This document shows positions 1 to 30,315 of a DNA stretch of 64,000 bases, in pieces (within the stretch, counting starts at the first letter, position 1; the number at the start of each line of letters is the position of its first letter). The notes below the pieces were generated by a model that ran no database searches, was not told the DNA's origin, and was given only the letters and a program-made list of their open reading frames with translations. The DNA is from Phyllobates terribilis (Eukaryota): NCBI RefSeq assembly GCF_046119375.1, contig NW_027362764.1, positions 806,992,001 to 807,056,000 on the forward strand, written 5' to 3'. A program made the position numbers and the translations under genes.

Positions 1-3000
1 TTATCTGTGGTGTTACATGGGACTGCGGGTGACATCTACTACATTATCTGTACTCAGAGTTATCACTGTGTTATCTGTGGTGTTACATAGGACTGCAGGT
101 GACATCTACTACATTATCTGTACTCAGAGAGTTATCACTGTGTTATCTGTGTGTGTTACATAGGACTGCAGGTGACATCTACTACATTATCTGTACTCAG
201 AGAGATATCACTGTGTTATCTGTGGTGTTACATAGGACTGCAGGTGACACCTACTACATTATCTGTACTCAGAGAGTTATCACTGTGTTATCTGTGGTGT
301 TACATAGGACTGCAGGTGACATCTACTACATTATCTGTACTCAGAGAGTTATCACTGTGTTATCTGTGGTGTTACATAGGACTGCAGGTGACATCTACTA
401 CATTATCTGTACTCAGAGAGATATCACTGTGTTATCTGTGGTGTTACATGGGACTGCAGGTGACATCTACTACATTATCTGTACTCAGAGAGTTATCACT
501 GTGTTATCGGTGGTGTTACATGGGACTGCAGGTGACATATACTACATTATCTGTACTCAGAGAGTGATCACTGTGTTATCTGTGCTGTTACATAGGACTG
601 CAGGTGACATCTACTACATTATCTGTACTCAGAGAGTGATCACTGTGTTATCTGTGGTGTTACATAGGACTGCAGTTGACATCTACTACATTATCTGTAC
701 TCAGAGAGTGATCACTGTGTTATCTGTGCTGTTACATAGGACTGCAGGTGACATCTACTACATTATCTGTACTCAGAGAGTTATCACCGTGTTATCTGTG
801 GTGTTACATAGGACTGCAGGTGACATCTACTACATTATCTGTACTCAGAGAGTTATCACTGTGTTATCTGTGGTGTTACATAGGACTGCAGGTGACATCT
901 ACTACATTATCTGTACTCAGAGAGATATCACTGTGTTATCTGTGGTGTTACATGGGACTGCAGGTGACATCTACTACATTATCTGTACTCAGAGAGTTAT
1001 CACTGTGTTATCTGTGGTGTTACATGGGACTGCAGGTGACATATACTACATTATCTGTACTCAGAGAGTGATCACTGTGTTATCTGTGCTGTTACATAGG
1101 ACTGCAGGTGACATCTACTACATTATCTGTACTCAGAGAGTGATCACTGTGTTATCTGTGGTGTTACATAGGACTGCAGGTGACATCTACTACATTATCT
1201 GTACTCAGAGAGTGATCACTGTGTTATCTGTGCTGTTACATAGGACTGCAGGTGACATCCACTACATTATCTGTACTCAGAGAGTTATCACTGTGTTATC
1301 TGTGGTGTTACATAGGACTGCAGGTGACATCTACTACATTATCTGTACTCAGAGAGATATCACTGTGTTATCTGTGGTGTTACATAGGACTGCAGGTGAC
1401 ATCTACTACATTATCTGTACTCAGAGAGTTATCACTGTGTTATCTGTGGTGTTACATGGGACTGCGGGTGACATCTACTACATTATCTGTACTCAGAGAG
1501 TTATCACTGTGTTATCTGTGTGTGTTACATAGGACTGCAGGTGACATCTACTACATTATCTGTACTCAGAGAGGTATCACTGTGTTATCTGTGGTGTTAC
1601 ATAGGACTGCAGGTGACATCTACTACATTATCTGTACTCAGAGAGTTATCACTGTGTTATCTGTGGTGTTACATAGGACTGCAGGTGACATCTACTACAT
1701 TATCTGTACTCAGAGAGTTATCACTGTGTTATCTGTGGTGTTACATAGGACTGCGGGTGACACCTACTACATTATCTGTACTCAGAGAGATATCACTGTG
1801 TTATCTGTGGTGTTACATAGGACTGCAGGTGACACCTACTACATTATCTGTACTCAGAGAGTTATCACTGTGTTATCTGTGGTGTTACATAGGACTGCAG
1901 GTGACATCTACTACATTATCTGTACTCAGAGAGGTATCACTGTGTTATCTGTGGTGTTACATGGGACTGCAGGTGACATCTACTACATTATCTGTACTCA
2001 GAGAGTTATCACTGTGTTATCTGTGGTGTTACATAGGACTGCAGGTGACATCTACTACATTATCTGTACTCAGAGAGTTATCACTGTGTTATCTGTGGTG
2101 TTACATAGGACTGCTGGTGACACCTACTACATTATCTGTACTCAGAGAGATATCACTGTGTTATCTGTGGTGTTACATAGGACTGCAGGTGACACCTACT
2201 ACATTATCTGTACTCAGAGAGTTATCACTGTGTTATCTGTGGTGTTACATAGGACTGCAGGTGACATCTACTACATTATCTGTACTCAGAGAGTTATCAC
2301 TGTGTTATCTGTGGTGTTACATAGGACTGCAGGTGACACCTACTACATTATCTGTACTCAGAGAGTTATCACTGTGTTATCTGTGGTGTTACATGGGACT
2401 GCAGGTGACATATACTACATTATCTGTACTCAGAGAGTGATCACTGTGTTATCTGTGGTGTTACATAGGACTGCAGGTGACACCTACTACGTTATCTGTA
2501 CTCAGAGAGTTATCACTGTGTTATCTGTGGTGTTACATGGGACTGCAGGTGACATATACTACATTATCTGTACTCAGAGAGTGATCACTGTGTTATCTGT
2601 GCTGTTACATAGGACTGCAGGTGACATCTACTACATTATCTGTACTCAGAGAGTAATCACTGTGTTATCTGTGGTGTTACATAGGACTGCAGGTGACATC
2701 TACTACATTATCTGTACTCAGAGAGTTATCACTGTGTTATCTGTGGTGTTACATAGGACTGCAGGTGACATCTACTACATTATCTGTACTCAGAGAGTTA
2801 TCACTGTGTTATCTGTGGTGTTACATAGGACTGCAGGTGACATCTACTACATTATCTGTACTCAGAGAGTTATCACTGTGTAATCTGTGGTGTTACATAG
2901 GACTGCAGGTGACATCTACTACATTATCTGTACTCAGAGAGTGATCACTGTGTTATCTGTGGTGTTACATAGGACTGCAGGTGACATCTACTACATTATC

Positions 3001-6000
3001 TGTACTCAGAGAGTTATCACTGTGTTATCTGTGGTGTTACATAGGACTGCAGGTGACATCTACTACATTATCTGTACTCAGAGTTATCACTGTGTTATCT
3101 GTGGTGTTACATGGGACTGCAGGTGACATCTACTACATTATCTGTACTCAGAGTTATCACTGTGTTATCTGTGTGTGTTACATAGGACTGCAGGTGACAT
3201 CTACTACATTATCTGTACTCAGAGTTATCACTGTGTTATCTGTGGTGTTACATGGGACTGCGGGTGACATCTACTACATTATCTGTACTCAGAGAGTTAT
3301 CACTGTGTTATCTGTGGTGTTACATAGGACTGCAGGTGACATCTACTACATTATCTGTACTCAGAGAGTTATCACTGTGTTATCTGTGGTGTTACATAGG
3401 ACTGCAGGTGACATCTACTACATTATCTGTACTCAGAGTTATCACTGTGTTATCTGTGGTGTTACATGGGACTGCGGGTGACATCTACTACATTATCTGT
3501 ACTCAGAGAGTTATCACTGTGTTATCTGTGTGTGTTACATAGGACTGCAGGTGACATCTACTACATTATCTGTACTCAGAGAGATATCACTGTGTTATCT
3601 GTGGTGTTACATAGGACTGCAGGTGACATCTACTACATTATCTGTACTCAGAGAGTTATCACTGTGTTATCTGTGGTGTTACATGGGACTGCGGGTGACA
3701 TCTACTACATTATCTGTACTCAGAGAGTTATCACTGTGTTATCTGTGTGTGTTACATAGGACTGCAGGTGACATCTACTACATTATCTGTACTCAGAGAG
3801 TTATCACTGTGTTATCTGTGGTGTTACATAGGACTGCAGGTGACATCTACTACATTATCTGTACTCAGAGAGCTATCACTCTGTTATCTGTGGTGTTACA
3901 TAGGACTGCAGGTGACATCTACTACATTATCTGTACTCAGAGAGCTATCACTGTGTTATCTGTGGTGTTACATAGGACTGCGGGTGACACCTACTACATT
4001 ATCTGTACTCAGAGAGATATCACTGTGTTATCTGTGGTGTTACATAGGACTGCAGGTGACACCTACTACATTATCTGTACTCAGAGAGTTATCACTGTGA
4101 TATCTGTGGTGTTACATAGGACTGCAGGTGACATCTACTACATTATCTGTACTCAGAGAGTTATCACTGTGTTATCTGTGGTGTTACATAGGACTGCAGG
4201 TGACATCTACTACATTATCTGTACTCAGAGAGATATCACTGTGTTATCTGTGGTGTTACATGGGACTGCAGGTGACATCTACTACATTATCTGTACTCAG
4301 AGAGTTATCACTGTGTTATCTGTGGTGTTACATGGGACTGCAGGTGACATATACTACATTATCTGTACTCAGAGAGTGATCACTGTGTTATCTGTGCTGT
4401 TACATAGGACTGCAGGTGACATCTACTACATTATCTGTACTCAGAGAGTGATCACTGTGTTATCTGTGGTGTTACATAGGACTGCAGGTGACATCTACTA
4501 CATTATCTGTACTCAGAGAGTTATCACTGTTATCTGTGGTGTTACATAGGACTGCAGGTGACATCTACTACGTTATCTGTACTCAGAGAGTTATCACTGT
4601 GTTATCTGTGGTGTTACATAGGACTGCAGGTGACACCTACTACATTATCTGTACTCAGAGTGTCATCACTGTGTTATCTGTGGTGTTACATAGGACTGCA
4701 GGTGACATCTACTACATTATCTGTACTCAGAGAGTTATCACTGTGTTATCTGTGGTGTTACATAGGACTGCAGGTGACATCTACTACATTATCTGTACTC
4801 AGAGAGTTATCACTGTGTTATCTGTGGTGTTACATAGGACTGCAGGTGACATCTACTACATTATCTGTATTCAGAGAGTTATCACTGTGTTATTACATAG
4901 GACTGCAGGTGACATCTACTACATTATCTGTACTCAGAGAGTTATCACTGTGTTATCTGTGGTGTTACATAGGACTGCAGGTGACATCTACTACATTATC
5001 TGTACTCAGAGAGATATCACTGTGTTATCTGTGGTGTTACATAGGACTGCAGGTGACATCTACTACATTATCTGTACTCAGAGAGTTATCACTGTGTTAT
5101 CTGTGGTGTTACATAGGACTGCAGGAGACATCTACTACATTATCTGTACTCAGAGAGTTATCACTGTGTTATCTGTGGTGTTACATAGGACTGCAGGTGA
5201 CATCTACTACATTATCTGTACTCAGAGTTATCACTGTGTTATCTGTGGTGTTACATAGGACTGCAGGTGACACCTACTACATTATCTGTACTCAGAGAGT
5301 TATCACTGTGTTATCTGTGGTGTTACATAGGACTGCAGGTGACATCTACTACATTATCTGTACTCAGAGAGTTATCACTGTGTTATCTGTAGTGTTACAT
5401 AGGACTGCAGGTGACATCTACTACATTATCTGTACTCAGAGAGTTATCACTGTGTTATCTGTGGTGTTACATAGGACTGCAGGTGTCATCTACTACATTA
5501 TCTGTACTCAGAGAGTTATCACTGTGTTATCTGTGGTGTTACATGGGACTGCAGGTGACATCTACTACATTATCTGTACTCAGAGTTATCACTGTGTTAT
5601 CTGTGGTGTTACATGGGACTGCGGGTGACATCTACTACATTATCTGTACTCAGAGAGTTATCACTGTGTTATCTGTGGTGTTACATAGGACTGCAGGTGA
5701 CATCTACTACATTATCTGTACTCAGAGAGTTATCACTGTGTTATCTGTGGTGTTACATAGGACTGCAGGTGACATCTACTACATTATCTGTACTCAGAGT
5801 TATCACTGTGTTATCTGTGGTGTTACATGGGACTGCGGGTGACATCTACTACATTATCTGTACTCAGAGAGTTATCACTGTGTTATCTGTGTGTGTTACA
5901 TAGGACTGCAGGTGACATCTACTACATTATCTGTACTCAGAGAGATATCACTGTGTTATCTGTGGTGTTACATAGGACTGCAGGTGACATCTACTACATT

Positions 6001-9000
6001 ATCTGTACTCAGAGAGTTATCACTGTGTTATCTGTGGTGTTACATGGGACTGCGGGTGACATCTACTACATTATCTGTACTCAGAGAGTTATCACTGTGT
6101 TATCTGTGTGTGTTACATAGGACTGCAGGTGACATCTACTACATTATCTGTACTCAGAGAGTTATCACTGTGTTATCTGTGTGTGTTACATAGGACTGCA
6201 GGTGACATCTACTACATTATCTGTACTCAGAGAGTCATCACTGTGTTATCTGTGGTGTTACATAGGACTGCAGGTGACATCTACTACATTATCTGTACTC
6301 AGAGAGCTATCACTGTGTTATCTGTGGTGTTACATAGGACTGCGGGTGATACCTACTACATTATCTGTACTCAGAGAGATATCACTGTGTTATCTGTGGT
6401 GTTACATAGGACTGCAGGTGACACCTACTACATTATCTGTACTCAGAGAGTTATCACTGTGATATCTGTGGTGTTACATAGGACTGCAGGTGACATCTAC
6501 TACATTATCTGTACTCAGAGAGTTATCACTGTGTTATCTGTGGTGTTACATAGGACTGCAGGTGACATCTACTACATTATCTGTACTCAGAGAGATATCA
6601 CTGTGTTATCTGTGGTGTTACATGGGACTGCAGGTGACATCTACTACATTATCTGTACTCAGAGAGTTATCACTGTGTTATCTGTGGTGTTACATGGGAC
6701 TACAGGTGACATATACTACATTATCTGTACTCAGAGAGTGATCACTGTGTTATCTGTGCTGTTACATAGGACTGCAGGTGACATCTACTACATTATCTGT
6801 ACTCAGAGAGTGATCACTGTGTTATCTGTGGTGTTACATAGGACTGCAGGTGACATCTACTACATTATCTGTACTCAGAGAGTTATCACTGTGCTATCTG
6901 TGGTGTTACATAGGACTGCGGGTGACATCTACTACATTATCTGTACTCAGAGAGTTATCACTGTGTTATCTGTGGTGTTACATAGGACTGCAGGTGACAC
7001 CTACTACATTATCTGTACTCAGAGTGTCATCACTGTGTTATCTGTGGTGTTACATAGGACTGCAGGTGACATCTACTACATTATCTGTACTCAGAGAGTT
7101 ATCACTGTGCTATCTGTGGTGTTACATAGGACTGCGGGTGACATCTACTACATTATCTGTACTCAGAGAGTTATCACTGTGTTATCTGTGGTGTTACATA
7201 GGACTGCAGGTGACATCTACTACATTATCTGTATTCAGAGAGTTATCACTGTGTTATTACATAGGACTGCAGGTGACATCTACTACATTATCTGTACTCA
7301 GAGAGTTATCACTGTGTTATCTGTGGTGTTACATAGGACTGCAGGTGACATCTACTACATTATCTGTACTCAGAGAGTTATCACTGTGTTATCTGTGGTG
7401 TTACATAGGACTGCAGGTGACATCTACTACATTATCTGTACTCAGAGTTATCACTGTGTTATCTGTGGTGTTACATGGGACTGCGGGTGACATCTACTAC
7501 ATTATCTGTACTCAGAGAGTTATCACTGTGTTATCTGTGTGTGTTACATAGGACTGCAGGTGACATCTACTACATTATCTGTACTCAGAGAGATATCACT
7601 GTGTTATCTGTGGTGTTACATAGGACTGCAGGTGACATCTACTACATTATCTGTACTCAGAGAGTTATCACTGTGTTATCTGTGGTGTTACATGGGACTG
7701 CGGGTGACATCTACTACATTATCTGTACTCAGAGAGTTATCACTGTGTTATCTGTGTGTGTTACATAGGACTGCAGGTGACATCTACTACATTATCTGTA
7801 CTCAGAGAGTTATCACTGTGTTATCTGTGTGTGTTACATAGGACTGCAGGTGACATCTACTACATTATCTGTACTCAGAGAGTCATCACTGTGTTATCTG
7901 TGGTGTTACATAGGACTGCAGGTGACATCTACTACATTATCTGTACTCAGAGAGCTATCACTGTGTTATCTGTGGTGTTACATAGGACTGCGGGTGATAC
8001 CTACTACATTATCTGTACTCAGAGAGATATCACTGTGTTATCTGTGGTGTTACATAGGACTGCAGGTGACACCTACTACATTATCTGTACTCAGAGAGTT
8101 ATCACTGTGATATCTGTGGTGTTACATAGGACTGCAGGTGACATCTACTACATTATCTGTACTCAGAGAGTTATCACTGTGTTATCTGTGGTGTTACATA
8201 GGACTGCAGGTGACATCTACTACATTATCTGTACTCAGAGAGATATCACTGTGTTATCTGTGGTGTTACATGGGACTGCAGGTGACATCTACTACATTAT
8301 CTGTACTCAGAGAGTTATCACTGTGCTATCTGTGGTGTTACATAGGACTGCGGGTGACATCTACTACATTATCTGTACTCAGAGAGTTATCACTGTGTTA
8401 TCTGTGGTGTTACATAGGACTGCAGGTGACACCTACTACATTATCTGTACTCAGAGTGTCATCACTGTGTTATCTGTGGTGTTACATAGGACTGCAGGTA
8501 ACATCTACTACATTATCTGTACTCAGAGAGTGATCACTGTGTTATCTGTGGTGTTACATAGGACTGCAGGTGACATCTACTACATTATCTGTACTCAGAG
8601 AGTGATCACTGTGTTATCTGTGGTGTTACATAGGACTGCAGGTGACATCTACTACATTATCTGTACTCAGAGAGTTATCACTGTGCTATCTGTGGTGTTA
8701 CATAGGACTGCGGGTGACATCTACTACATTATCTGTACTCAGAGAGTTATCACTGTGTTATCTGTGGTGTTACATAGGACTGCAGGTGACACCTACTACA
8801 TTATCTGTACTCAGAGTGTCATCACTGTGTTATCTGTGGTGTTACATAGGACTGCAGGTGACATCTACTACATTATCTGTACTCAGAGAGTTATCACTGT
8901 GCTATCTGTGGTGTTACATAGGACTGCGGGTGACATCTACTACATTATCTGTACTCAGAGAGTTATCACTGTGTTATCTGTGGTGTTACATAGGACTGCA

Positions 9001-12000
9001 GGTGACATCTACTACATTATCTGTATTCAGAGAGTTATCACTGTGTTATTACATAGGACTGCAGGTGACATCTACTACATTATCTGTACTCAGAGAGTTA
9101 TCACTGTGTTATCTGTGGTGTTACATAGGACTGCAGGTGACATCTACTACATTATCTGTACTCAGAGAGATATCACTGTGTTATCTGTGGTGTTACATAG
9201 GACTGCAGGTGACATCTACTACATTATCTGTACTCAGAGAGTTATCACTGTGTTATCTGTGGTGTTACATAGGACTGCAGGTGACATCTACTACATTATC
9301 TGTACTCAGAGTTATCACTGTGTTATCTGTGGTGTTACATAGGACTGCAGGTGACATCTACTACATTATCTGTACTCAGAGAGTTATCACTGTGTTATCT
9401 GTGGTGTTACATAGGACTGCAGGTGACATCTACTACATTATCTGTACTCAGAGTTATCACTGTGTTATCTGTGGTGTTACATAGGACTGCAGGTGACATC
9501 TACTACATTATCTGTACTCAGAGAGTTATCACTGTGTTATCTGTGGTGTTACATAGGACTGCAGGTGACATCTACTACATTATCTGTACTCAGAGAGTTA
9601 TCACTGTGTTATCTGTGGTGTTACATAGGACTGCAGGTGACATCTACTACATTATCTGTACTCAGAGAGCTATCACTGTGTTATCTGTGGTGTTACATAG
9701 GACTGCGGGTGATACCTACTACATTATCTGTACTCAGAGAGATATCACTGTGTTATCTGTGGTGTTACATAGGACTGCAGGTGACACCTACTACATTATC
9801 TGTACTCAGAGAGTTATCACTGTGATATCTGTGGTGTTACATAGGACTGCAGGTGACACCTACTACATTATCTGTACTCAGAGTGTCATCACTGTGTTAT
9901 CTGTGGTGTTACATAGGACTGCAGGTGACATCTACTACATTATCTGTACTCAGAGAGTTATCACTGTGTTATCTGTGGTGTTACATAGGACTGCAGGTGA
10001 CATCTACTACATTATCTGTACTCAGAGTTATCACTGTGTTATCTGTGGTGTTACATAGGACTGCAGGTGACATCTACTACATTATCTGTACTCAGAGAGT
10101 TATCACTGTGTTATCTGTGGTGTTACATAGGACTGCAGGTGACATCTACTACATTATCTGTACTCAGAGTTATCACTGTGTTATCTGTGGTGTTACATAG
10201 GACTGCGGGTGATACCTACTACATTATCTGTACTCAGAGAGATATCACTGTGTTATCTGTGGTGTTACATAGGACTGCAGGTGACACCTACTACATTATC
10301 TGTACTCAGAGAGTTATCACTGTGATATCTGTGGTGTTACATAGGACTGCAGGTGACACCTACTACATTATCTGTACTCAGAGTGTCATCACTGTGTTAT
10401 CTGTGGTGTTACATAGGACTGCAGGTGACATCTACTACATTATCTGTACTCAGAGAGTCATCACTGTGTTATCTGTGGTGTTACATAGGACTGCAGGTGA
10501 CATCTACTACATTATCTGTACTCAGAGAGCTATCACTGTGTTATCTGTGGTGTTACATAGGACTGCGGGTGATACCTACTACATTATCTGTACTCAGAGA
10601 GATATCACTGTGTTATCTGTGGTGTTACATAGGACTGCAGGTGACACCTACTACATTATCTGTACTCAGAGAGTTATCACTGTGATATCTGTGGTGTTAC
10701 ATAGGACTGCAGGTGACATCTACTACATTATCTGTACTCAGAGAGTTATCACTGTGTTATCTGTGGTGTTACATAGGACTGCAGGTGACATCTACTACAT
10801 TATCTGTACTCAGAGAGATATCACTGTGTTATCTGTGGTGTTACATGGGACTGCAGGTGACATCTACTACATTATCTGTACTCAGAGAGTTATCACTGTG
10901 TTATCTGTGGTGTTACATGGGACTACAGGTGACATATACTACATTATCTGTACTCAGAGAGTGATCACTGTGTTATCTGTGCTGTTACATAGGACTGCAG
11001 GTGACATCTACTACATTATCTGTACTCAGAGAGTGATCACTGTGTTATCTGTGGTGTTACATAGGACTGCAGGTGACATCTACTACATTATCTGTACTCA
11101 GAGAGTTATCACTGTGCTATCTGTGGTGTTACATAGGACTGCGGGTGACATCTACTACATTATCTGTACTCAGAGAGTTATCACTGTGTTATCTGTGGTG
11201 TTACATAGGACTGCAGGTGACACCTACTACATTATCTGTACTCAGAGTGTCATCACTGTGTTATCTGTGGTGTTACATAGGACTGCAGGTGACATCTACT
11301 ACATTATCTGTACTCAGAGAGTTATCACTGTGCTATCTGTGGTGTTACATAGGACTGCGGGTGACATCTACTACATTATCTGTACTCAGAGAGTTATCAC
11401 TGTGTTATCTGTGGTGTTACATAGGACTGCAGGTGACATCTACTACATTATCTGTATTCAGAGAGTTATCACTGTGTTATTACATAGGACTGCAGGTGAC
11501 ATCTACTACATTATCTGTACTCAGAGAGTTATCACTGTGTTATCTGTGGTGTTACATAGGACTGCAGGTGACATCTACTACATTATCTGTACTCAGAGAG
11601 ATATCACTGTGTTATCTGTGGTGTTACATAGGACTGCAGGTGACATCTACTACATTATCTGTACTCAGAGAGTTATCACTGTGTTATCTGTGGTGTTACA
11701 TAGGACTGCAGGTGACATCTACTACATTATCTGTACTCAGAGTTATCACTGTGTTATCTGTGGTGTTACATAGGACTGCAGGTGACATCTACTACATTAT
11801 CTGTACTCAGAGAGTTATCACTGTGTTATCTGTGGTGTTACATAGGACTGCAGGTGACATCTACTACATTATCTGTACTCAGAGTTATCACTGTGTTATC
11901 TGTGGTGTTACATAGGACTGCAGGTGACATCTACTACATTATCTGTACTCAGAGAGTTATCACTGTGTTATCTGTGGTGTTACATAGGACTGCAGGTGAC

Positions 12001-13297
12001 ATCTACTACATTATCTGTACTCAGAGAGTTATCACTGTGTTATCTGTAGTGTTACATAGGACTGCAGGTGACATCTACTACATTATCTGTACTCAGAGAG
12101 TTATCACTGTGTTATCTGTGGTGTTACATAGGACTGCAGGTGTCATCTACTACATTATCTGTACTCAGAGAGTTATCACTGTGTTATCTGTGGCGTTACA
12201 TGGGACTGCAGGTGACATCTACTACATTATCTGTACTCAGAGAGTTATCACTGTGTTATCTGTAGTGTTACATAGGACTGCAGGTGACATCTACTACATT
12301 ATCTGTACTCAGAGAGTTATCACTGTGTTATCTGTGGTGTTACATAGGACTGCAGGTGTCATCTACTACATTATCTGTACTCAGAGAGTTATCACTGTGT
12401 TATCTGTGGCGTTACATAGGACTGCAGGTGACATCTACTACATTATCTGTACTCAGAGAGTTATCACTGTGTTACCTGTGGTGTTACATAGGACTGCAGG
12501 TGACATCTACTACATTATCTGTACTCAGAAAGTTATCACTGTGTTATCTGTGGTGTTACATAGGACTGCAGGTGACATCTACTACATTATGTGTACTCAG
12601 AGAGTTATCATTGTGTTATCTGTGGTGTTACATAGGACTGCAGGTGACATCTACTACATTATCTGTACTCAGAGAGTTATCACTGTGTTATCTGTGGTGT
12701 TACATAGGACTGCAGGTGACATCTACTACATTATCTGTACTCAGAGAGTTATCACTGTGTTATCTGTGGTGTTACATAGGACTGCTGGTGACATCTGCTA
12801 CATTATCTGTACTCAGAGAGTTATCACTGTGTTATCTGTGGTGTTACATAGGACTGCAGGTGACATCTACTACATTATCTGTACTCAGAGAGTTATCACT
12901 GTGTTATCTGTGGTGTTACATAGGACTGCTGGTGACATCTGCTACATTATCTGTACTCAGAGAGTTATCACTGTGTTATCTGTGGTGTTACATAGGACTG
13001 CAGGTGACATCTACTACATTATCTGTACTCAGAGAGTTATCACTGTGTTATCTGTGGTGTTACATAGGACTGCAGGTGTCATCTACTACATTATCTGTAC
13101 TCAGAGTTATCACTGTGTTATCTGTGGTGTTACATAGGACTGCAGGTGACATCTACTACATTATCTGTACTCAGAGAGTTATCACTGTGTTATCTGTGGT
13201 GTTACATAGGACTGCAGGTGACATCTACTACATTATCTGTACTCAGAGAGTTATCACTGTGTTATCTGTGGTGTTACATGGGACTGCAGGTGACATC
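1..13297 (+). repeat. 72-bp tandem satellite, about 185 copies, continues past the left window edge
   Basis: Monomer TTATCACTGTGTTATCTGTGGTGTTACATAGGACTGCAGGTGACATCTACTACATTATCTGTACTCAGAGAG. Length variants are 70 bp (GA lost), 73 bp (GTGTGT) and 63 bp. The ORF track shows the expected 24-aa periodicity. Clean match ends at GACATC 13297, with degenerate similarity to about 13308. Confidence 0.99.
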
Positions 13298-13659
13298 CAA
13301 TGCATTATAACTTGCTATCTCTCTGGTATGATACATTTTCCTGCATATAAGGGAGTTCAATCGCTTTTTCTTTTATCTCTAACATGAAGAACTGTATTAT
13401 GGTTTAAAGATTCAAGTTGCAGTACCACTTTCTACCACAGCTGGCTGCAAATCTTTCCATTAACACTTATGCAACAGCGCCCCCAGCTCTGTTCTAAAGG
13501 GAATCTGATGCTTTTCTTTGAAAACTAATAACTATGGATGGAGGCTTCACCTAATAATCACACAATCCTCCTCCTGTGTCTCAGGAGGAGCCGCAGAGTA
13601 ATCACTGATCAAATATAAATTCTATGTTCCCTCTAATTGGCCGTATCGTCTTCAGTCTT

Positions 13660-20658: not shown

Positions 20659-21260
20659 GGTCTGTATTTAAGGGGTCAGGTCTGGGGGTCTGTATTTAGG
20701 GGGTTAAGTCTGGGGTCTGTATTTAGGGGGTTGGGTCTGGGGTCTGTATTTAGGGGGTCAGGTCTGAATGAAGGGGGTCAGGTCTGGGGTCTGTATTTAG
20801 AGGGTCAGGTCTGGGATCTGTATTTAGGGGGTCAGGTCTGGATGAAGGGGGTCAGGTCTGGGGTCTGCATTTAGGGGGCCGGGTCTGGGGTCTGTATTTA
20901 GGGGGTCATGTCTGGGGTCTGTACTTAGGGGGTCAGGTCTTTGGTCTGTATTTAGGGGGTCAGGTCTTGGGTCTGTATTTAGGGGGTCAGGACTGGGGTC
21001 TGTATTAAGGGGGTCAGGTCTTGGGTCTGTATTTAGGGGGTCAGGACTGTGGTCTGTATTTAGGGGGTCAGGTCTTGGGTCTGTATTTAAGGGGTCAGGT
21101 CTGGGGTCTGTATTTAGGTCTCAGGTCAGACTCTGAAAATAAATTCAGACCCCAGATCAGCCATTAAAATTAATATAGACCCCAGACCAGACCCCTGAAA
21201 AATACCCAGACTTCAGGCCAGACACCTGAAATAAATTCTGACTCCAGACCCTAGATCTGA
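20659..21260 (+). repeat. 27-bp G-rich tandem repeat (about 17 copies) followed by degenerate inverted copies
   Basis: CTGTATTTAGGGGGTCAGGTCTGGGGT repeats to about 21122. Reverse-complement remnants (TAAATTCAGACCCC, ATAGACCCCAGACC) follow at about 21139-21260. Confidence 0.9.
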
Positions 21261-22541
21261 TTTCGACCTTGGCCCACACCCTGATGGCGGGGGGTCTGCA
21301 CGGTCCGGGCAGCTGGTGCTCCAGGTCCAGATATGAACTCGACACCTATAGGGTATTCTTGTCTCAGACATCTTAGGTTATGTGATGCTTTATGTTCTTT
21401 TTTATGTCCCTTTTTAGACCATCCATGATGACAATGAGCCCCTGTCCATCGCCCGACAGATCCACCCGGCCCTGGATCCCTGCAGGAGGGGTCTCTGGGA
21501 TGTGACCCCTTTAATACACGGTCTTCAGGTTGAGTGACAACACCGGCAGAGCCTGGACGGACGAGCGGGCACGTAGTAATGCTGTGCAGAGACTTGGGGG
21601 ATGCTGGGAGGTGTTGAGAGGACGAATATGTCTTTTTCCACCGCAGGTCACAGACGTTTCACTCCCTGACTGACGAGGATAAAACATTGTCGTCGGCAAA
21701 AAGCGTGAATGACTCCTGGAGACGCGGTGGCACTTACATACGCCATCATCTCATCATCTAATGCTTCTCTAGGTCTGAAGTACAAGGTCTGCAGCTCTCA
21801 GCCATTATCCCCTCCGCTGGGGATGAACATCACAGGGTGGAGCAGATGATCTGTCGGGGGATGAGCAGAGCGCCCCCTTATGTCCACACCGTCTCCTCCT
21901 GTCGTCGCCTGCAGCTGCTCGGGAAATCAATTCTGGACGAATTGTGTGACATATAGGGAGGTGAAGTACCAAGACCACGACGTGTGGGGGACACGATACA
22001 ATGGAGACGGATGAAGAGGGAGAAGGAGGGAACATGGAAGCAGCAAGACGGGCAAGCCCCAAATATCATAAGACCAAGAGTCAGGACCAACGGGGTACAT
22101 GGCTGGGTCATCAAATGGGGGAGAAAAACACCCGGAAACCAGAGAGGGTCATTAGGTCCCCAGATATGGGACTAGAAAATTACTGGATATCTGGATCACC
22201 ACTTATGACCACCACATCACTAAACATATAGCGGGTGAAATAACTAATGAACTCGTCACCAATTTCCTAAGTAAATCTATTTCGAAAGCTGCTATCCACA
22301 CAGGCAAAGAAATCACCATAGATGTCAATGTCGATGTAATAATGAGAAATGACACTGGGAAAAGTATTAAACACATGAAGAAATAGAGGAGCAAAACGCC
22401 CTGGAAAGTCCTGACACCGACTGAGATCTATCAGTAATTAGAAAGCAATCCTGACACTTAGTGACCAATAATATCAGCCAGTTCAAATGATCGCTGATAA
22501 AAATGTGTCTCATTATCAAGGCGCCACACAAGAACCATCTC

Positions 22542-24176
22542 ATGATGTGTAAAACCAGTGAACTGCCTCAAGACCTTCACAACCTTATTGCTGCAAAACA
22601 TGCTGAGGTTATTGGTTACAAAAGAATTTCTAAAACTACTGAAGGTTCCAGTGAGCGCTGCTGGGGCCATAATCTGGAAGTGGAAACAAAATGATTTCAC
22701 CATAAACCGGCTACGACCATGTGCTCCCCGCAAGATGTCAGACAGAGGAGTGAAAAGAATTAACAAAAGAGTTGTCCAAGGGTCAAGGACCATCTGTGGA
22801 GAGCTACAGAAAGACCTGCAATCAGCAGGCACAATTGTTTAACAAAAAACTATAAGTAATGCACTCAACCTCCATGGCCTGTATGCATGTTCACCATGCA
22901 ACCTCCATGGCCCGTATGCAGGCTCACCACGCAATCTCCATGGCCTGTATGCATTCTCACCAGGCAACCTCCATGGCCTGTATGCACGCTCACCACACAA
23001 CCTCCATGGCCTGTATGCACGCTCACCACGCAACCTCCATGGCCTGAATGCACGCTCACCACGCAACCTCCATCACCTGTATGCACGCTCACCACACAAC
23101 CTCCATGGCCTGTATGCTCGCTCACCACACAACCTCCATCGCCTGTATGCACGCTCACCACGCAACCTCCATGGCCTGTATGCACGCTCACCACGCAACC
23201 TCCATGGCCTGTATGCACGCTCACCACGCAACCTCCATGGCCTGTATGCACGCTCACCACGCAACCTCCATGGCCTGTATTCACACTCACCATGCAACCT
23301 CCATGGCCTGTATGCACGCTCACCACGCAACCTCCATGGCCTGTATGCACGCTCACCACGCAACCTCCATGGCCTGTATTCACACTCACCATGCAACCTC
23401 CATGGCCTGTATGCACGCTCACCATGCAACCTCCATGGCCTGTATTCACACTCACCATGCAACCTCCATGGCCTGTATGCACGCTCACCACGCAACCTCC
23501 ATGGCCTGCATGCACGCTCACCACACAACCTCCATGGCCTGTATGCACGCTCACCACGCAACCTCCATGGCCTGTATGTATGCTCACCATGCAACCTCCA
23601 TGGCCTGTATGCATGCTCACCACGCAACCTCTATGGCCTGTATGCAAGCTCACCAGGCAACCTCCATGGCCTGTATGCACGCTCACCACGCAACCTCCAT
23701 GGCCTGTATGCACGCTCACCACACAACCTCCATGACCTGTATGCTCGCTCACCACGCAACCTCCATGGTCTGTATGCTCGCTCACCACGCTACCTCCATG
23801 GTCTGTATGCACGCTCACCACACAACCTCCATGACCTGTATGCACGCTCACCACGCAACCTCCATGGCCTGTATGCTCGCTCACCACGCAACCTCCCAAA
23901 CACACAGCCAAGGAAATTCTCAAATGGTTTTTGAGAAAGAATATAAATCTGCTAGAATGGCCGAGCCGATCACCGGACCTGAATCCAATAGAAAATGTGT
24001 GGAAGGAACTAAAGCTCAGAGATCATAGAAGGAGCCACAGAAGCTTCAGGATGTGACGAGTGTTTGTGTGGAAGAATGGGCTAAAATCCCACCTGAGCAA
24101 TGTCTGCCACTAGTTTCTCCATCAGGCGGAGCCTTGAAGCTTCATCACCAACAAAGGCTTTTGTGCAAAGTATTAA
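22542..24176 (+). pseudogene. Tc1 transposase pseudogene (element A)
   Basis: N-terminal part: MMCKTSELPQDLHNLIAAKH..GYKRISK / LLKVPVSAAGAIIWKWK..RPCAPRKMSDRG..GELQKDLQSAGTIV*QKTISNALNLHGLYA, with a frameshift near 22635 and a stop at 22840. After the array: PKHTAKEILKWFLRKNINLLEWPSRSPDLNPIENVW..KGFCAKY*. The two catalytic Asp motifs (WSDE, QDND) are absent; the Glu motif (NPIE) is present. Confidence 0.93.
22866..23895 (+). repeat. 33-bp minisatellite derived from Tc1 transposase coding sequence, about 31 copies
   Basis: Monomer CAACCTCCATGGCCTGTATGCACGCTCACCACG. In the transposase frame it reads NLHGLYARSPR and is continuous with the upstream TISNAL codons. Confidence 0.97.
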
Positions 24177-24399
24177 ATACATTTCAGTAAGGGTGTGCAA
24201 TATTTTTTCCCTGCGTCACTTCTCATTATTACACATAATTTATGGAAATCTATAGTGATTTCTTTGCTGCGTGGATTGGATGGGATCTTACCGACATCTG
24301 GGGAGAATTTCATGTCAATAGCACCTTTACAAATACATTTACTTAGAAAACTGGCAATGTGTTCAATACTAATTTCACCCACTGTATACACTGCATATA

Positions 24400-24560
24400 C
24401 AGCTTGTGCGAAAGTTTAGGCAAGTGTATAATAAATGCTGCAGAGAAGATTCATACACAGAAGGGTTAATAGTATATTTTTATAAATTATCAAAATTAAA
24501 AGTGATGAAAAGAGAAATGTAAATTTCATCAGTATCTGGTGACCGCCCGTCGCCTCCATC
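24400..24560 (-). mobile_element. Tc1/mariner element B: 3' end only
   Basis: TA (24398-99) is followed by the TIR-like CAGCTTGTGCGAAAGTTTAGGCAAG and about 130 bp of AT-rich UTR. On the minus strand follows GAG GCG ACG GGC GGT CAC C AGA TAC TGA, resembling the Tc1 transposase C-terminus (KAKGGHTKY*). Family assignment rests on general knowledge of Tc1 ends. Confidence 0.72.
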
Positions 24561-27002
24561 ATCAGTATCTGGTGACCGCCCGTCACCTCCATCATCAGTA
24601 TCTGGTGACCGCCCGTCACCTCCATCATCAGTATCTGGTGACCGCCCGTCACCTCCATCATCAGTATCTGGTGACCGCCCGTCGCCTCCATCATCAGTAT
24701 CTGGTGACCGCCCGTCGCCTCCATCATCAGTATCTGGTGACCGCCCGTCGCCTCCATCATCAGTATCTGGTGACCGCCCGTCGCCTCCATCATCAGTATC
24801 TGGTGACCGCCCGTCACCTCCATCATCAGTATCTGGTGACCGCCCGTCACCTCCATCATCAGTATCTGGTGACCGCCCGTCGCCTCCATCATCAGTATCT
24901 GGTGACCGCCCGTCACCTCCATCATCAGTATCTGGTGACCGCCCGTCACCTCCATCATCAGTATCTGGTGACCGCCCGTCGCCTCCATCATCAGTATCTG
25001 GTGACCGCCCGTCACCTCCATCATCAGTATCTGGTGACCGCCCGTCACCTCCATCATCAGTATCTGGTGACCGCCCATCGCCTCCATCATCAGTATCTGG
25101 TCACTGCCCGTCACCTCCATCATCAGTATCTGGTGACCACCTATCACCTCCATCTCTGGTGACTGCCCGTCTCCTCCATCATCAGTATCTGGTGACCGCC
25201 TGTCGCCACCATCATCAGTATCTGGTGACTACCTATCACCTCCATCATCAGTATCTGGTGACTGCCCGTCTCCTCCATCATCAGTATCTGGTGACCGCCT
25301 GTCGCCACCATCATCAGTATCTGGTGACCACCCATCGCCTCCATCATCAGTATCTAGTGACTAACTATCACCTCCATCATCAGTATCTGGTGACTACCTA
25401 TCACCTCCATCATCATTATCTGGTGACTGCCCGTCCCCTCCATCATCAGTATCTGGTGACTGCCCGTCCCCTCCATCATCAGTATTTAGTGACCGCCTGT
25501 CGTCTCCATCATCAGTATCTGGTGACCGCCCGTCTTCTCCATCATCAGTATCTGGTGACCGCCCGTCTCCTCCATCATCAGTATCTGGTCACCGCCCGTC
25601 TCCTCTATCATCAGAATCTGGTGACTGCCCGTCTCCTCCATCATCAGTATCTGATGACCGCCCGTCTCCTCCATCATCAGTATCTGGTGACCGCCCGTCT
25701 CCTCCATCATCAGTATCTGGTCACCGCCCGTCTCCTCCATCATCAGTAACTGGTGACCGCCTGTCGCCTCCACCATCAGTATCTGGTGACCGCCTGTCTC
25801 CTCCATCATCAGTATCTGGTGACCACCCGTCACCTCCATCATCAGTATCTGGTGACTGCCCGTCACCTCCATCATCAGTATCTGGTGACCGCCCGTCTCC
25901 TCCATCATCAGTATCTGGTGACCGCCCGTCTCCTCCATCATCAGTATCTGGTGACCGCCCGTCACCTCCATCATCAGTATCTGGTGACCGCCTGTCCCCT
26001 CCATCATCAGTATCTGGTGACCGCCCGTCTCCTCCATCATCAGTATCTGGTGACCGCCCGTCTCCTCCATCATCAGTATCTGGTGACCGCCCGTCTCCTC
26101 CATCATCAGTATCTGGTGACCGCCCGTCTCCTCCATCATCAGTATCTGGTGACCGCCCGTCTGCTCCATCATCAGTATCTGGTGACCGCCCGTCTCCTCC
26201 ATCATCAGTATCTGGTCACCGCCCGTCTCCTCCATCATCAGTATCTGGTCACCGCCCGTCTCCTCCATCATCAGTATCTGGTCACCGCCCGTCTCCTCCA
26301 TCATCAGTATCTGGTCACCGCCCGTCTCCTCCATCATCAGTATCTGGTCACCGCCCGTCTCCTCCATCATCAGTATCTGGTCACCGCCCGTCTCCTCCAT
26401 CATCAGTATCTGGTCACCGCCCGTCTCCTCCATCATCAGTATCTGGTCACCGCCCGTCTCCTCCATCATCAGTATCTGGTCACCGCCCGTCTCCTCCATC
26501 ATCAGTATCTGGTCACCGCCCGTCTCCTCCATCATCAGTATCTGGTCACCGCCCGTCTCCTCCATCATCAGTATCTGGTCACCGCCCGTCTCCTCCATCA
26601 TCAGTATCTGGTCACCGCCCGTCTCCTCCATCATCAGTATCTGGTGACCGCCCGTCTCCTCCATCATCAGTATCTGGTCACCGCCCGTCACCCCCATCAT
26701 CAGTATCTGGTCACCGCCCGTCTCCTCCATCATCAGTATCTGGTCACCGCCCGTCTCCTCCATCATCAGTATCTGGTCACCGCCCGTCTCCTCCATCATC
26801 AGTATCTGGTCACCGCCCGTCTCCTCCATCATCAGTATCTGGTCACCGCCCGTCTCCTCCATCATCAGTATCTGGTCACCGCCCGTCTCCTCCATCATCA
26901 GTATCTGGTCACCGCCCGTCTCCTCCATCATCAGTATCTGGTCACCGCCCGTCTCCTCCATCATCAGTATCTGGTCACCGCCCGTCTCCTCCATCATCAG
27001 TA
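24527..27002 (+). repeat. 33-bp minisatellite, about 75 copies
   Basis: Monomer CATCAGTATCTGGTGACCGCCCGTCTCCTCCAT, giving 11-aa periodicity (HHQYLVTARLL / MMEETGGHQIL). Confidence 0.98.
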
Positions 27003-27004
27003 TC

Positions 27005-27254: not shown

Positions 27255-27292
27255 TACAGTGGGTACGGAAAGTATTCAGACCCCTTTACATT
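27255..27292 (+). mobile_element. Orphan 38-bp duplicate of the element C terminus (TA plus TIR start)
   Basis: TACAGTGGGTACGGAAAGTATTCAGACCCCTTTACATT is identical to 28693-28730. Confidence 0.95.
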
Positions 27293-28692
27293 ACGGATCT
27301 TGTACTGATCCTGAGTTAAATCCTGTATTATACCCCAGAGCTGCACTCACTATTCTGCTGGTGCAGTCACTGTGTACATACATTACATTACTGATCCTGA
27401 GCTACATCCTGTATTATACTCCAGAGCTGCACTCACTATTCTGATGGTGCAGTCACTGTGTACATACATTACATTACTGATCCTGAGTTACATCCTGTAT
27501 TATACCCCAGAGCTGCACTCACTATTCTGATGGTGCAGTCACTGTGTACATACATTACATTACTGATCCTGCACTGATCCTGAGTTATATCCTGTATTAT
27601 AATCCAGAGCTGCACTCACTATTCTGCTGGTGGAGTCACTGTGTACATACATTACATTACTGATCCTGAGTTACATCCTGTATTATACTCCAGAGCTGCA
27701 CTCACTATTCTGATGGTGCAGTCACTGTGTACATACATTACATTACTGATCCTGCACTGATCCTGAGTTATATCCTGTATTATAATCCAGAGCTGCACTC
27801 ACTATTCTGCTGGTGCAGTCACTGTGTACATACATTACATTACTGATCCTGAGTTACATCCTGTATTATACTCCAGAGCTGCACTCACTATTCTGCTGGT
27901 GCAGTCACTGTGTACATACATTACATTACTGATCCTGAGTTACATCCTGTATTATACCCCAGAGCTGCACTCACTATTCTGCTGGTGCAGTCACTGTGTA
28001 CATACATTACATTACTGATCCTGAGTTACATCCTGTATTATACCCCAGAGCTGCACTCACTATTCTGCTGGTGCAGTCACTGTGTACATACATTACATTA
28101 CTGATCCTGAGTTACATCCTGTATTATACTCCAGAGCTGCACTCACTATTCTGCTGGAGCAGTCACTGTGTACATACATTATATTACTGATCCTGAGTTA
28201 CATCCTGTATTATACTCCAGAGCTGCACTCACTATTCTGCTGGTGGAGTCACTGTGTACATACATTACATTACTGATCCTGAGTTACATCCTGTATTATA
28301 CTCCAGAGCTGCACTCACTATTCTGCTGGAGCAGTCACTGTGTACATACATTACATTACTGATCCTGAGTTACATCCTGTATTATACTCCAGAGCTGCAC
28401 TCACTATTCTGCTGGTGGAGTCACTGTGTACATACATTACATTACTGATCCTGAGTTACATCCTGTATTATACTCCAGAGCTGCACTCACTATTCTGCTG
28501 GTGCAGTCACTGTGTACATACATTACATTACTGATCCTGAGTTACCTCCTGTATTATACTCCAGAGCTGCACTCACTATTCTGCTGGTGCAGTCACTGTG
28601 TACATACATTATATTACTGATCCTGAGTTACATCCGGTATTATACTCCAGAGCTGCACTCACTATTCTGCTGGAGCAGTCACTGTGTACATG
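27293..28692 (+). repeat. 86-bp satellite, about 16 copies
   Basis: Monomer ACTGTGTACATACATTACATTACTGATCCTGAGTTACATCCTGTATTATACTCCAGAGCTGCACTCACTATTCTGCTGGTGCAGTC. Near-identical small ORFs recur every 86 bp. Two units carry an extra 11 bp (GCACTGATCCT). Confidence 0.98.
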
Positions 28693-28694
28693 TA

Positions 28695-30313
28695 CAGTGG
28701 GTACGGAAAGTATTCAGACCCCTTTACATTTTTCACTCTTTGTTTCATTGCAGCTATTTGGTAAATTCTATAAAGTTCATTTTTTTTCTCATTAAAGTCC
28801 ACTCTGCACCCCATCTTGACTGAAAAAAAACAGAAATGTAGAAATTTTTGCAAATGTATTAAAAAAGAAAAACTGAGATATCACATGGTCATAAGTATTC
28901 AGACCCTTTGCTCAGTATTGAGTAGAAGCCCCCTTTTGAGCTTGTACAGCCGTGAGTCTTCTTGGAAATGATGCAACAGGTTTTTCACCCCTGGATTTGG
29001 GGGTCCTCTGCCATTCTTCCTTGCAGATCCTCTCCAGTTCCGTCAGGTTGGATGGTGAGCGTTGGTGGACAGCCATTTTCAGGTCTCTCCAGAGATGCTC
29101 AATTGGGTTTAGGTCAGGGCTCTGGCTGGGCCAGTCAAGAATGGTCACAGAGTTGTTCTGAAGCCACTCCTTTGTTATTTTAGCTGTGTGCTTAGGGTCA
29201 TTGTCTTGTTGGAAGGTGAACCTTCGGCCAAGTCTGAGGTCCGCAGCACTCTGGAAGAGGTTTTCATCCAGGATATCTCTGTACTTGGCCGCATTCATGT
29301 TTCCTTCAATTGCAACCAGTCGTCCTGTCCCTGCAGCTGAAAAATACCCCCATAGCATGATGCAGCCACCACCATGTCTCACTGTTGGGATTGTATTGGG
29401 CAGGTGATGAGCAGTGCCTGGTTTTCTCCACACATACCGCTTAGAATTATCACCAAAAAGTTCTCTTTGTCTCATCAGACCAGAGAATCTTATTTCTCAT
29501 AGTCTGGGAGTCCTTCATGTGTTTTTAAGCAAACTCTATGCGGGCTTTCATATGTCTTGCACTGAGGAGAGGCTTCCGTCAGTCCACTCTGCCATAAAGG
29601 CCCGACTGGTGGAGGGCTGCAGTGAGAGTTGACCTTGTAGAACTTTCTCCCATCTCCCTACTGCATCTCTGGAGCTCAGCCGCAGTGATCTTGGGGTTCT
29701 TCTTTACCTCTCTCACCAAGGCTCTTCTCCCACAATTGCCCTGTTTGGCTGGATGGCCAGGTCTAGGAAGACTTCTGGTGGTCCCAAACTTCTTCCATTT
29801 AAGGATTATGGAGGCCACTGTGCTCTGAGGAACCTTGAGTAATGCAGAGATTCTTTTGTAACCTTGGCCAGATCTGTGCCTTGCCACAATTCTGTCTCTG
29901 AGCTCCTTGGGCAGTTCCTTTGAGCTCATGATTCTCATTTGGTCTGACATGCACTGTGAGCTGTGAGGTCTTATATAGACAGGTGTGCGCCTTTCCAAGT
30001 CAAGTCCTATCAGTTTAATTAAACACAGCTGGACTCCAATGAAGGAGTAGAACCATCTCAAGGAGGATCACAAGGAAATGGACACCATGTGACTTAAATA
30101 TGGGTCTGAATACTTATGACCATGTGCTATTTCAGTTTTTCTTTTTTAATAAATTTGCAAAACTCTCTACATTTCTGTTTTTTTTTCAGTCAAGATGGGG
30201 TGCAGAGTGGACTGTAAGGAGAAAAAAATGAACTTTTTAGAATTTACCAAATGGCTGCAATGAAACAAAGAGTGAAAAATTTTAAGGGGTCTGAAGACTT
30301 TCCGTTCCCACTG
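28695..30313 (-). mobile_element. Full-length Tc1 element C (1619 bp, IR/DR-type TIRs of about 215 bp, TA target duplication)
   Basis: TA|CAGTGGGTACGGAAAGTATTCAGACCCC at 28695 and GGGGTCTGAAGACTTTCCGTTCCCACTG|TA ending at 30313. Inner direct repeats AAGTATTCAGACCC at about 28895 and GGGTCTGAATACTT at about 30102. Confidence 0.98.
28912..29938 (-). pseudogene. Tc1 DD34E transposase pseudogene (element C)
   Basis: MSSKELPKELRDRIVARHRSGQGYKRIS..WSDE..VWRKPG..HGGGCIMLWGYFS..FQQDNDPKHTA..WPSQSPDLNPIEHLW..KGASTQY*. In-frame stops near 29580 (GRVD*) and 29526 (EFA*), plus a frameshift just after WSDETK. Confidence 0.97.
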
Positions 30314-30315
30314 TA

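What the first reader, a model, noticed from the sequence alone, without database searches (positions are those of the whole stretch)
22866..23895. Minisatellite born from 11 codons of a transposase, replacing its catalytic core
Seen: the CDS runs ..ACT ATA AGT AAT GCA CTC AAC CTC CAT GGC CTG TAT GCA.. straight into about 31 copies of NLHGLYARSPR. It then jumps to CCC AAA CAC ACA GCC (PKHTA), skipping on the order of 130 codons including both catalytic aspartates. Known: this segment ends the Tc1 DNA-binding region, just before the basic NLS-like motif, and is normally single-copy. Inference: duplication began by slippage between two CAA microhomologies 33 bp apart, coupled to the deletion. 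The exit junction is out of frame, so no repeat-protein fusion is expected.
Basis: partly seen in the sequence, partly recalled or inferred. Interest (0 to 1): 0.75.

Follow-up and report, generated by a model that had tools for sequence, protein, structure and literature searches.

The report
Minisatellite grown from dead Tc1 transposase
A dead, internally deleted Tc1 transposon, probably in a frog genome, has amplified 33 bases of its own transposase gene into a 31-copy tandem array; the origin is unusually easy to trace, but this is an ordinary, almost certainly functionless case of repeat DNA arising from a transposon.

Summary
Window 22867-23896 holds 31 exact-period 33-bp units plus 7 nt, with no indels, inside a TA-flanked Tc1 element (22229-24384).

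Four DNA relatives and 61 protein relatives carry this segment once.

In relatives, a perfect CAA (6 of 8 when extended) lies 33 nt apart at the unit borders. At the exit, 7 nt of a unit join the element at PKHTA through a TCC microhomology. About 383 nt are missing, including both catalytic aspartates, and the junction is out of frame.

- The reading frame was already broken upstream (a frameshift, and a TAA 8 codons before the array).
- Coupling of duplication and deletion is not shown. The deletion starts inside a unit, so it cannot have come before the first duplication.

CpG decay, an 8:38 synonymous to non-synonymous ratio and clustered variants indicate neutral, methylated DNA that kept turning over. 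84% of the window is tandem arrays.

First-stage notes, unchecked, list similar Tc1-born arrays elsewhere in this genome.

Verdict: a new member of a known kind, of modest interest.

The parts
22227..22228 (.). left TA target-site duplication
   Evidence: Read directly. It sits just outside the inverted-repeat arm found.
22229..22363 (+). left terminal inverted repeat region. The terminus reads TAGCGGGTG, two changes from the right end's CAGTGGGTG.
   Evidence: Inverted-repeat pairs I1, I2 and I3: arms 22226-22363 against 24205-24387, 77-90% complementary.
22542..22866 (+). remnant of the transposase N-terminal DNA-binding (paired HTH) region. It is broken by a frameshift near 22640-22690 and a TAA stop at 22840-22842.
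   Evidence: Translations. Pfam HTH_SB E=2.7e-6 and 3.8e-3, both below the curated cut-off. phmmer relatives reach E=1e-19 and 72% identity, and they carry HTH_SB/HTH_Tnp_Tc3_2.
22867..23889 (+). 31 full 33-bp units (consensus peptide NLHGLYARSPR), with no indels
   Evidence: The consensus is 32/33 identical to the single-copy segment of relative L001.
23890..23896 (+). partial 32nd unit (AACCTCC). Its last three bases, TCC (23894-23896), are shared with the sequence before PKH in relative L002, so they form the deletion junction microhomology.
23897..24176 (+). remnant of the transposase C-terminus, from PKHTAKE through NPIEN (the third catalytic residue) to ...FCAKY-stop, with stops and frameshifts
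   Evidence: Pfam DDE_3 E=2.8e-9, 37.4 bits against a cut-off of 28.6. Matches Sleeping Beauty SB100X chain 5cr4_A residues 137-182, E=1e-13. Translations.
24205..24384 (-). right terminal inverted repeat region, ending ...CACCCACTG
24385..24386 (.). right TA target-site duplication
   Evidence: Read directly.

Best explanation
This is a neutral, transposon-derived minisatellite inside a dead Tc1-type DNA transposon.

The element (22229-24384) inserted at a TA site. A 33-bp stretch at the end of its DNA-binding region was duplicated in tandem, most simply by replication slippage or unequal sister exchange between a short direct repeat. That repeat is CAA when perfect and CAC-N-CAA at 6 of 8 when extended, and it lies exactly 33 nt apart in the ancestral sequence. 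This stretch encodes NRHGLYARSPR in relatives and NLHGLYARSPR here. Once two copies existed, unequal exchange or slippage expanded and kept reshuffling the array, now 31 units.

A deletion of about 383 bp, from 7 nt inside a repeat unit to the codons just before PKHTA, joined through a TCC microhomology. It removed any downstream units and the catalytic core with both aspartates. This deletion happened after or together with the first duplication.

No protein is made from the array: there is a stop and a frameshift upstream, no start codon in frame, and an out-of-frame exit.

Shown: the derivation, the breakpoints, the microhomologies, the broken frames, and the signs of neutral decay and turnover. 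Inferred: the molecular mechanism, the order and timing of events, and that the array arose at this locus.
For: Derivation:
- Relatives L001-L004 carry the 33 bp once, followed by AAGACTCC. The array consensus matches L001 at 32/33. The only difference is G5>T, which is present in all 31 units.
- 61 of 152 protein relatives carry the homologous segment once per transposase, and none carries it in tandem.

Breakpoints:
- CAA is present at both borders in L001, L002 and L004.
- The exit shares TCC with L002.
- The 383 nt missing encode WSDETK and QQDND.
- The E-bearing part is kept.

Neutral decay:
- 19 of 46 unit variants are CpG transitions at two CpG sites.
- Divergence is 19% per site at CpG positions against 2.45% elsewhere.
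- The synonymous to non-synonymous ratio is 8:38.

Turnover:
- Units 13, 16 and 18 share three variants.
- Units within 3 steps of each other are more alike than in 5000 shuffles of unit order (p=0.002).
- Edge units are the most diverged: 3.0 differences against 1.28.
- Flank-private divergence is about 13% (58/441 sites), against 2.45% unit-to-consensus.

Context:
- 84% of the window is tandem arrays of unrelated units.
- The neighbouring Tc1 remnant also runs into a 33-bp array made of its last codons.

Literature: transposon-derived tandem repeats, and microhomology-mediated internal deletions of Tc1/mariner elements, are documented (PMC9659126; PMC3814204).
Against: - Only one copy could be examined. 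Whether the array arose at this locus, or came with a transposed array-bearing derivative, is untested.
- The 3-nt microhomologies are short and could be chance.
- The 13% 'private' flank divergence may partly reflect subfamily or species differences from the four relatives rather than age at this locus.
- The array consensus carries fewer private changes (1 of 33) than the flank rate predicts (about 3-4). This is not significant (P about 0.1-0.2), but it leaves the timing open.
- No reads were available to confirm copy number or polymorphism.
Confidence: 0.75

Rival explanations
1. One complex repair event produced both lesions. After excision, or a break in the element, error-prone gap repair (abortive gap repair, or microhomology-mediated template switching) slipped back 33 nt one or more times. 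It then jumped forward about 383 nt. The tandem duplication and the core deletion were therefore born together.
For: Both junctions carry only 3-nt microhomologies, as expected for template switching or end joining. The deletion starts inside a repeat unit, so the two lesions are physically contiguous. The neighbouring Tc1 remnant shows the same design, an array with the rest of the element missing. Abortive gap repair is the accepted source of Tc1 and P deletion derivatives (PMC3814204).
Against: Nothing ties the two events in time. A two-step history fits equally well and needs no special process. The 5' edge units are more decayed than the 3' edge units (3.0 against 1.67 differences). That weakly suggests the 3' edge was cut later. 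The region makes arrays from non-transposon DNA too, so a transposition-linked process is not needed.
Confidence: 0.12
2. The array-bearing deletion derivative is a mobilised non-autonomous subfamily, like the Xenopus miDNA4 element. On this reading the array was born elsewhere and this is one of many copies.
For: The element keeps both inverted repeats and TA duplications. First-stage notes report Tc1 elements with internal arrays in several other windows of this genome, including one with an 11-codon unit (s1-218035). These notes are unchecked.
Against: No second copy of the monomer or of either arm at high identity exists in the 64-kb window. No unit-to-unit junction or deletion junction was found in JGI metagenome contigs, though that is a weak test. 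The left terminus is mutated at two of the first five bases.
Confidence: 0.1
3. Assembly artefact: the copy number or the whole array is a mis-assembly of repetitive reads.
For: The window is 84% tandem arrays, a setting that is hard to assemble.
Against: There are 20 distinct unit variants in a non-periodic order, with edge decay and CpG decay. This is not what collapse or stutter produces. Both junctions to the Tc1 arms are clean.
Confidence: 0.03

Closest known systems
miDNA4 of Xenopus tropicalis, a Tc1/mariner miniature element with an internal tandem-repeat motif (cited in PMC12054243 and in Table 1 of PMC9659126)
   Same: A frog Tc1/mariner-derived, non-autonomous, TIR-bounded element that carries a tandem array inside. 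Multi-repeat copies sit in repeat-rich chromosome regions.
   Different: miDNA4 is a high-copy mobile family, and its repeat is not traced to transposase codons. Here only one copy is known, the unit is a mapped 11-codon piece of the transposase gene, and mobility is untested.
Xstir tandem repeats riding on the Xmix MITE in Xenopus laevis (Hikosaka and Kawahara 2004, cited in PMC3814204 and PMC9659126)
   Same: Tandem repeats created from and carried within a DNA transposon in a frog.
   Different: The Xstir unit comes from the TIR region, not the coding sequence, and it became a dispersed satellite family.
Transposon-derived minisatellites in the human genome (about 7,276 cases, arising in any region of the element; reference 61 in PMC9659126)
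   Same: A short internal segment of a dead transposable element is expanded in place into a minisatellite. The array is neutral and decays at CpG sites.
   Different: The human cases are mostly Alu and LTR retroelements. This one is a DNA transposon coding segment with an adjoining core deletion.
Satellites derived from transposon open reading frames (PROsat and Pvc20 from LINE-1 ORF2, chicken HinfI/SCR1 partly from CR1 ORF2; Table 1 of PMC9659126)
   Same: The repeat unit is taken from the coding sequence of a transposable element.
   Different: Those are large satellite families from retrotransposons. This is a 1-kb array still embedded in its parent element.
Microhomology-mediated internal deletion derivatives of Tc1/mariner (Ozma giving Gnome, Elf and Goblin in Aedes; PMC3814204)
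   Same: An internal deletion of the transposase core between short microhomologies, with both ends kept.
   Different: Those junctions have 6-8 bp microhomology and no tandem array. Here the microhomology is 3 nt and the left breakpoint lies inside a minisatellite unit.

Membership tests
Tc1/mariner superfamily, Tc1-like element | TA target-site duplication flanking the element | tested here: met
   TA at 22227-22228 and at 24385-24386, just outside the inverted repeats.
Tc1/mariner superfamily, Tc1-like element | Terminal inverted repeats beginning CAGTG... | tested here: met
   Arms 22226-22363 and 24205-24387 are 77-90% complementary. The right end reads CAGTGGGTG and the left end reads TAGCGGGTG, with two substitutions. 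Relative L002 has CAGCGGGG.../...CCCCACTG ends.
Tc1/mariner superfamily, Tc1-like element | N-terminal paired-type helix-turn-helix DNA-binding region | tested here: met
   The Pfam HTH_SB hits fall below the curated cut-off (27.5 and 17.4 bits against 43). However, phmmer finds 219 relatives, the best at E=1e-19 and 72% identity, and their genes carry HTH_SB and HTH_Tnp_Tc3_2.
Tc1/mariner superfamily, Tc1-like element | DDE/DDD catalytic domain with all three acidic residues | tested here: not met
   Only the last third of the domain is present: DDE_3 at 37.4 bits, above the cut-off, covering profile positions 91-141 of 146, with a match to SB100X. The segment holding the first and second aspartates is deleted. 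The element is therefore a deletion derivative, not an autonomous member.
Minisatellite (VNTR) | Head-to-tail array with a unit of about 10-100 bp spanning 0.5 kb or more | tested here: met
   33 bp x 31.2 units = 1,030 bp with no indels.
Minisatellite (VNTR) | Internal variant units with signs of unequal exchange or turnover | tested here: met
   There are 20 unit types. Units 13, 16 and 18 are identical three-change variants. Nearby units are more alike than in shuffles of unit order (p=0.002), and the edge units are the most diverged.
Minisatellite (VNTR) | Copy-number polymorphism between individuals | not testable with these tools
Mobile transposon-borne tandem repeat families (miDNA4 / Xstir type) | Many dispersed copies of the same element that carry the same repeat | not testable with these tools
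   No second copy exists in the window. No hits in JGI metagenome contigs. The host genome itself could not be searched.

The most novel reading that the evidence does not exclude
In this (probably dendrobatoid frog) genome, Tc1 elements would be a systematic nursery of minisatellites. An error-prone repair process acting on Tc1 copies would create a tandem duplication and an adjoining internal deletion in one step. Array-bearing derivatives would then be mobilised or expanded, seeding the large satellites that fill regions like this window. The evidence that keeps this open is the neighbouring Tc1 remnant with the same 'array plus missing remainder' design, and the many unchecked scan notes of Tc1-born arrays elsewhere in the genome.
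Probability: 0.12. Interest if true: 0.6.

Novelty: new member of a known kind. Interest (0 to 1): 0.27.

Why it matters
This is a clean, fully traceable example of how a minisatellite is born. The progenitor segment, the 33-nt-spaced microhomology, the deletion junction and the later turnover can all be read from sequence and checked against single-copy relatives.

On its own it adds one case to a well-documented class, tandem repeats derived from transposable elements, and it has no likely function.

Its wider value depends on whether Tc1-born arrays are unusually frequent in this genome. If they are, that would bear on how giant frog genomes build up satellite DNA from their very abundant Tc1/mariner load (PMC6278860 reports at least 0.4 Gb of Mariner/Tc1 in a poison frog).

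Tried and rejected
- **Word-based protein search.** I searched with the array frame (residues 1-63, candidates 200-635 aa). 1,683 candidates shared words, but none scored E<=1. No array-bearing protein of that size is on record. This is uninformative for short-read assemblies.
- **Look-up of array ORFs.** Exact-product look-ups of two long array ORFs found nothing on record. The source genome could therefore not be identified that way.
- **Metagenome scans.** Scans of JGI metagenome contigs for the unit-to-unit junction and for the deletion junction gave 0 hits each. Frog DNA is not expected there, so this is weak.
- Depth, polymorphism and other genomic copies remain untested.
- **Hairpin-driven slippage.** Three-unit stretches fold no better than shuffles on either strand (z +1.55 and +1.36). 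Rejected.
- **Known RNA families.** No Rfam family matches in 21000-24600.
- **Kinship with other arrays in the window.** Best local scores between this unit and the others were 6-11. Rejected.
- **Repeat protein.** Rejected, because there is an upstream TAA and frameshift, all three forward frames of the unit are open, the exit is out of frame, and the synonymous to non-synonymous ratio is 8:38. Pfam hits of the array ORF (ORF29-like, desulfoferrodoxin) are low-complexity repeat artefacts.
- **Dating the founding unit.** I compared the array consensus with the flank decay rate: 1 change observed against 3-4 expected. This is not significant, so no timing claim is made.
- **Findings search by sequence.** It returned nothing.

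Full report
**Observation.**
Tandem Repeats Finder reports a 33-bp period, 31.4 copies, 92% matches and no indels at 22862-23896. Cut in register from 22867, there are 31 full units and then AACCTCC. Every unit translates to NLHGLYARSPR or a near variant, in the frame of the preceding ...TISNAL.

The consensus unit matches 30 times at 3 mismatches or fewer, with 0 expected in shuffles. Neither the monomer nor the element arms recur at high identity elsewhere in the window. After the array the sequence continues C-AAA-CAC-ACA-GCC (PKHTA) in a different frame.

**The host element.**
Inverted-repeat arms at 22226-22363 and 24205-24387, with TA on both sides, bound a Tc1-type element at 22229-24384.
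- The right-hand coding remnant passes Pfam's DDE_3 threshold, at E=2.8e-9 and 37.4 bits. It aligns to Sleeping Beauty SB100X from PKHT onward, E=1e-13.
- The left-hand remnant gives only sub-threshold HTH_SB hits. An exhaustive phmmer search found 219 relatives, the best at E=1e-19 and 72% identity, and their genes carry HTH_SB/HTH_Tnp_Tc3_2.

The copy is dead. It has a frameshift near 22640-22690, a TAA at 22840-22842 eight codons before the array, and further stops and shifts in the C-terminal part.

Named relatives come from the poison frogs Ranitomeya imitator and Anomaloglossus baeobatrachus. More distant ones come from the fishes Silurus meridionalis and Electrophorus voltai. I infer from this that the window is probably from an anuran.

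**Derivation of the monomer.**
- Six close relatives read ...KKTISNALNRHGLYARSPRKTPLLKKKH..., with the segment present once.
- Among 152 retrieved relatives, 61 contain the homologous segment, always once per transposase and never in tandem.
- I fetched the DNA of four relatives, L001-L004. All have the 33 bp once, followed by AAGACTCC (K-T-P).
- The array consensus is identical to L001 at 32 of 33 bases. The single difference, G5>T (CGC to CTC, Arg to Leu), is present in all 31 units.

**Junctions.**
At the entry, relatives have ...CAC-T-C|AAC... before the unit and ...CAC-G-C|AAG... after it. This is a perfect CAA, or 6 of 8 when extended, exactly 33 nt apart. It is present in L001, L002 and L004 and is mutated on one side in L003.

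At the exit, the partial unit AACCTCC abuts CAAACAC. L002 reads GATCCCAAACAC there, so TCC is shared by both partners.

Relative to L002, about 383 nt are missing (3372-3754). They encode WSDETK and QQDND, that is, the first and second catalytic aspartates. The NPIEN glutamate remains.

The left breakpoint lies 7 nt inside a unit. A deletion made before any duplication would have removed most of the unit itself. At least one duplication must therefore have existed already or arisen at the same moment. This is a logical constraint on order, not proof of coupling.

**State of the array.**
- Units differ from their consensus by 4.5%.
- 19 of the 46 differences are CpG transitions at the two CpG sites. 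Divergence is 19% per site there, against 2.45% elsewhere.
- Synonymous to non-synonymous changes run 8:38, so the peptide is not under selection.
- Units 13, 16 and 18 are identical three-change variants.
- Units within three steps of each other are more alike than in shuffles of unit order (p=0.002).
- The first three units are the most diverged, at 3.0 differences against 1.28 for interior units.
- At sites where all relatives agree, the flanks of this copy differ at about 13% of positions (58/441). That is about five times the unit-to-consensus value.

The array therefore kept being homogenised long after the copy diverged. One caveat applies: part of that 13% may be subfamily or species difference rather than age at this locus.

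Single-stranded folding of the units is no better than for shuffled sequence, and no Rfam family matches.

**Context.**
About 53.9 of the 64 kb (84%) are tandem arrays of nine mutually unrelated units. Thirteen bases beyond the right TA lies the 3' end of another Tc1, on the minus strand and ending at 24400. Its inner side runs straight into a 33-bp x 75 array, and that unit reads A-V-T-R-Y-stop on the minus strand, which is the last codons of a transposase. This partly confirms the scan note s1-230141.

The region evidently generates arrays readily. The few non-array sequences in it, largely Tc1 remnants, serve as raw material. First-stage notes list many other Tc1-born arrays in this genome, including one with an 11-codon unit, s1-218035. 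These notes are unchecked leads.

**Interpretation.**
The best-supported reading is a neutral minisatellite, probably born at this locus. It was seeded by slippage or unequal exchange between a short 33-nt-spaced repeat and then expanded and turned over. It is truncated on its 3' side by a microhomology-mediated deletion of about 383 bp that removed the catalytic core.

Three rivals cannot be excluded without the genome or reads:
- a mobilised array-bearing subfamily;
- an assembly error.

**Comparison with what is known.**
- Tandem repeats derived from transposable elements are well documented, including from coding regions and from frog Tc1/mariner derivatives such as miDNA4 and Xstir (PMC9659126, PMC12054243).
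- Microhomology-mediated internal deletion of Tc1/mariner elements is also documented (PMC3814204).

This is a new and unusually legible member of a known kind.

**Limits.**
Copy number, polymorphism and other genomic copies are untested.

Noticed in passing
window 24400-27004: The 3' UTR and inverted-repeat end of a second Tc1 lie on the minus strand, ending at 24400, 13 nt from the studied element's right TA. This remnant runs directly into a 33-bp x 75 array. On the minus strand the unit reads A-V-T-R-Y-stop-stop, which is the last codons of a transposase. No further Tc1 coding sequence follows on the far side. The design is the same as in the studied array: one edge in Tc1 coding sequence and the rest of the element gone.
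   Followed up: partly
window 1-13308 and 46462-64000: The two outer 72-bp arrays (186 and 245 copies) are the same unit in opposite orientation. Together they form a very large inverted arrangement around a 33-kb centre that is itself mostly arrays. Overall about 84% of the window is tandem repeats.
   Followed up: partly
window 28705-30315 (minus strand) and 27258-28691: A third Tc1, of a different family, has ends of the type CAGTGGGAACGGAAAGT. It has a nearly complete but broken transposase, which includes the homologous segment STLTAALHQSGLYGRV once. A similar Tc1 end at 27258-27300 abuts the 86-bp x 16 array.
   Followed up: no
proteins P0002, P0018, P0015, P0009: Several database 'proteins' are gene-model fusions of this Tc1 family's N-terminus with host genes. 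Examples are a farnesyl pyrophosphate synthase-like model in Ranitomeya imitator and zinc-finger models in Anomaloglossus. Related copies also occur in a catfish and an electric eel, so the family is shared by frogs and fishes.
   Followed up: no
L001 about 960-975 and L004 about 1018-1033: Two relatives from the same run series read GACCAAACAC where L002 reads GATCCCAAACAC. They share this 2-nt loss at exactly the DND|PKH position where the studied deletion ends. This may hint at a fragile C-run there.
   Followed up: no
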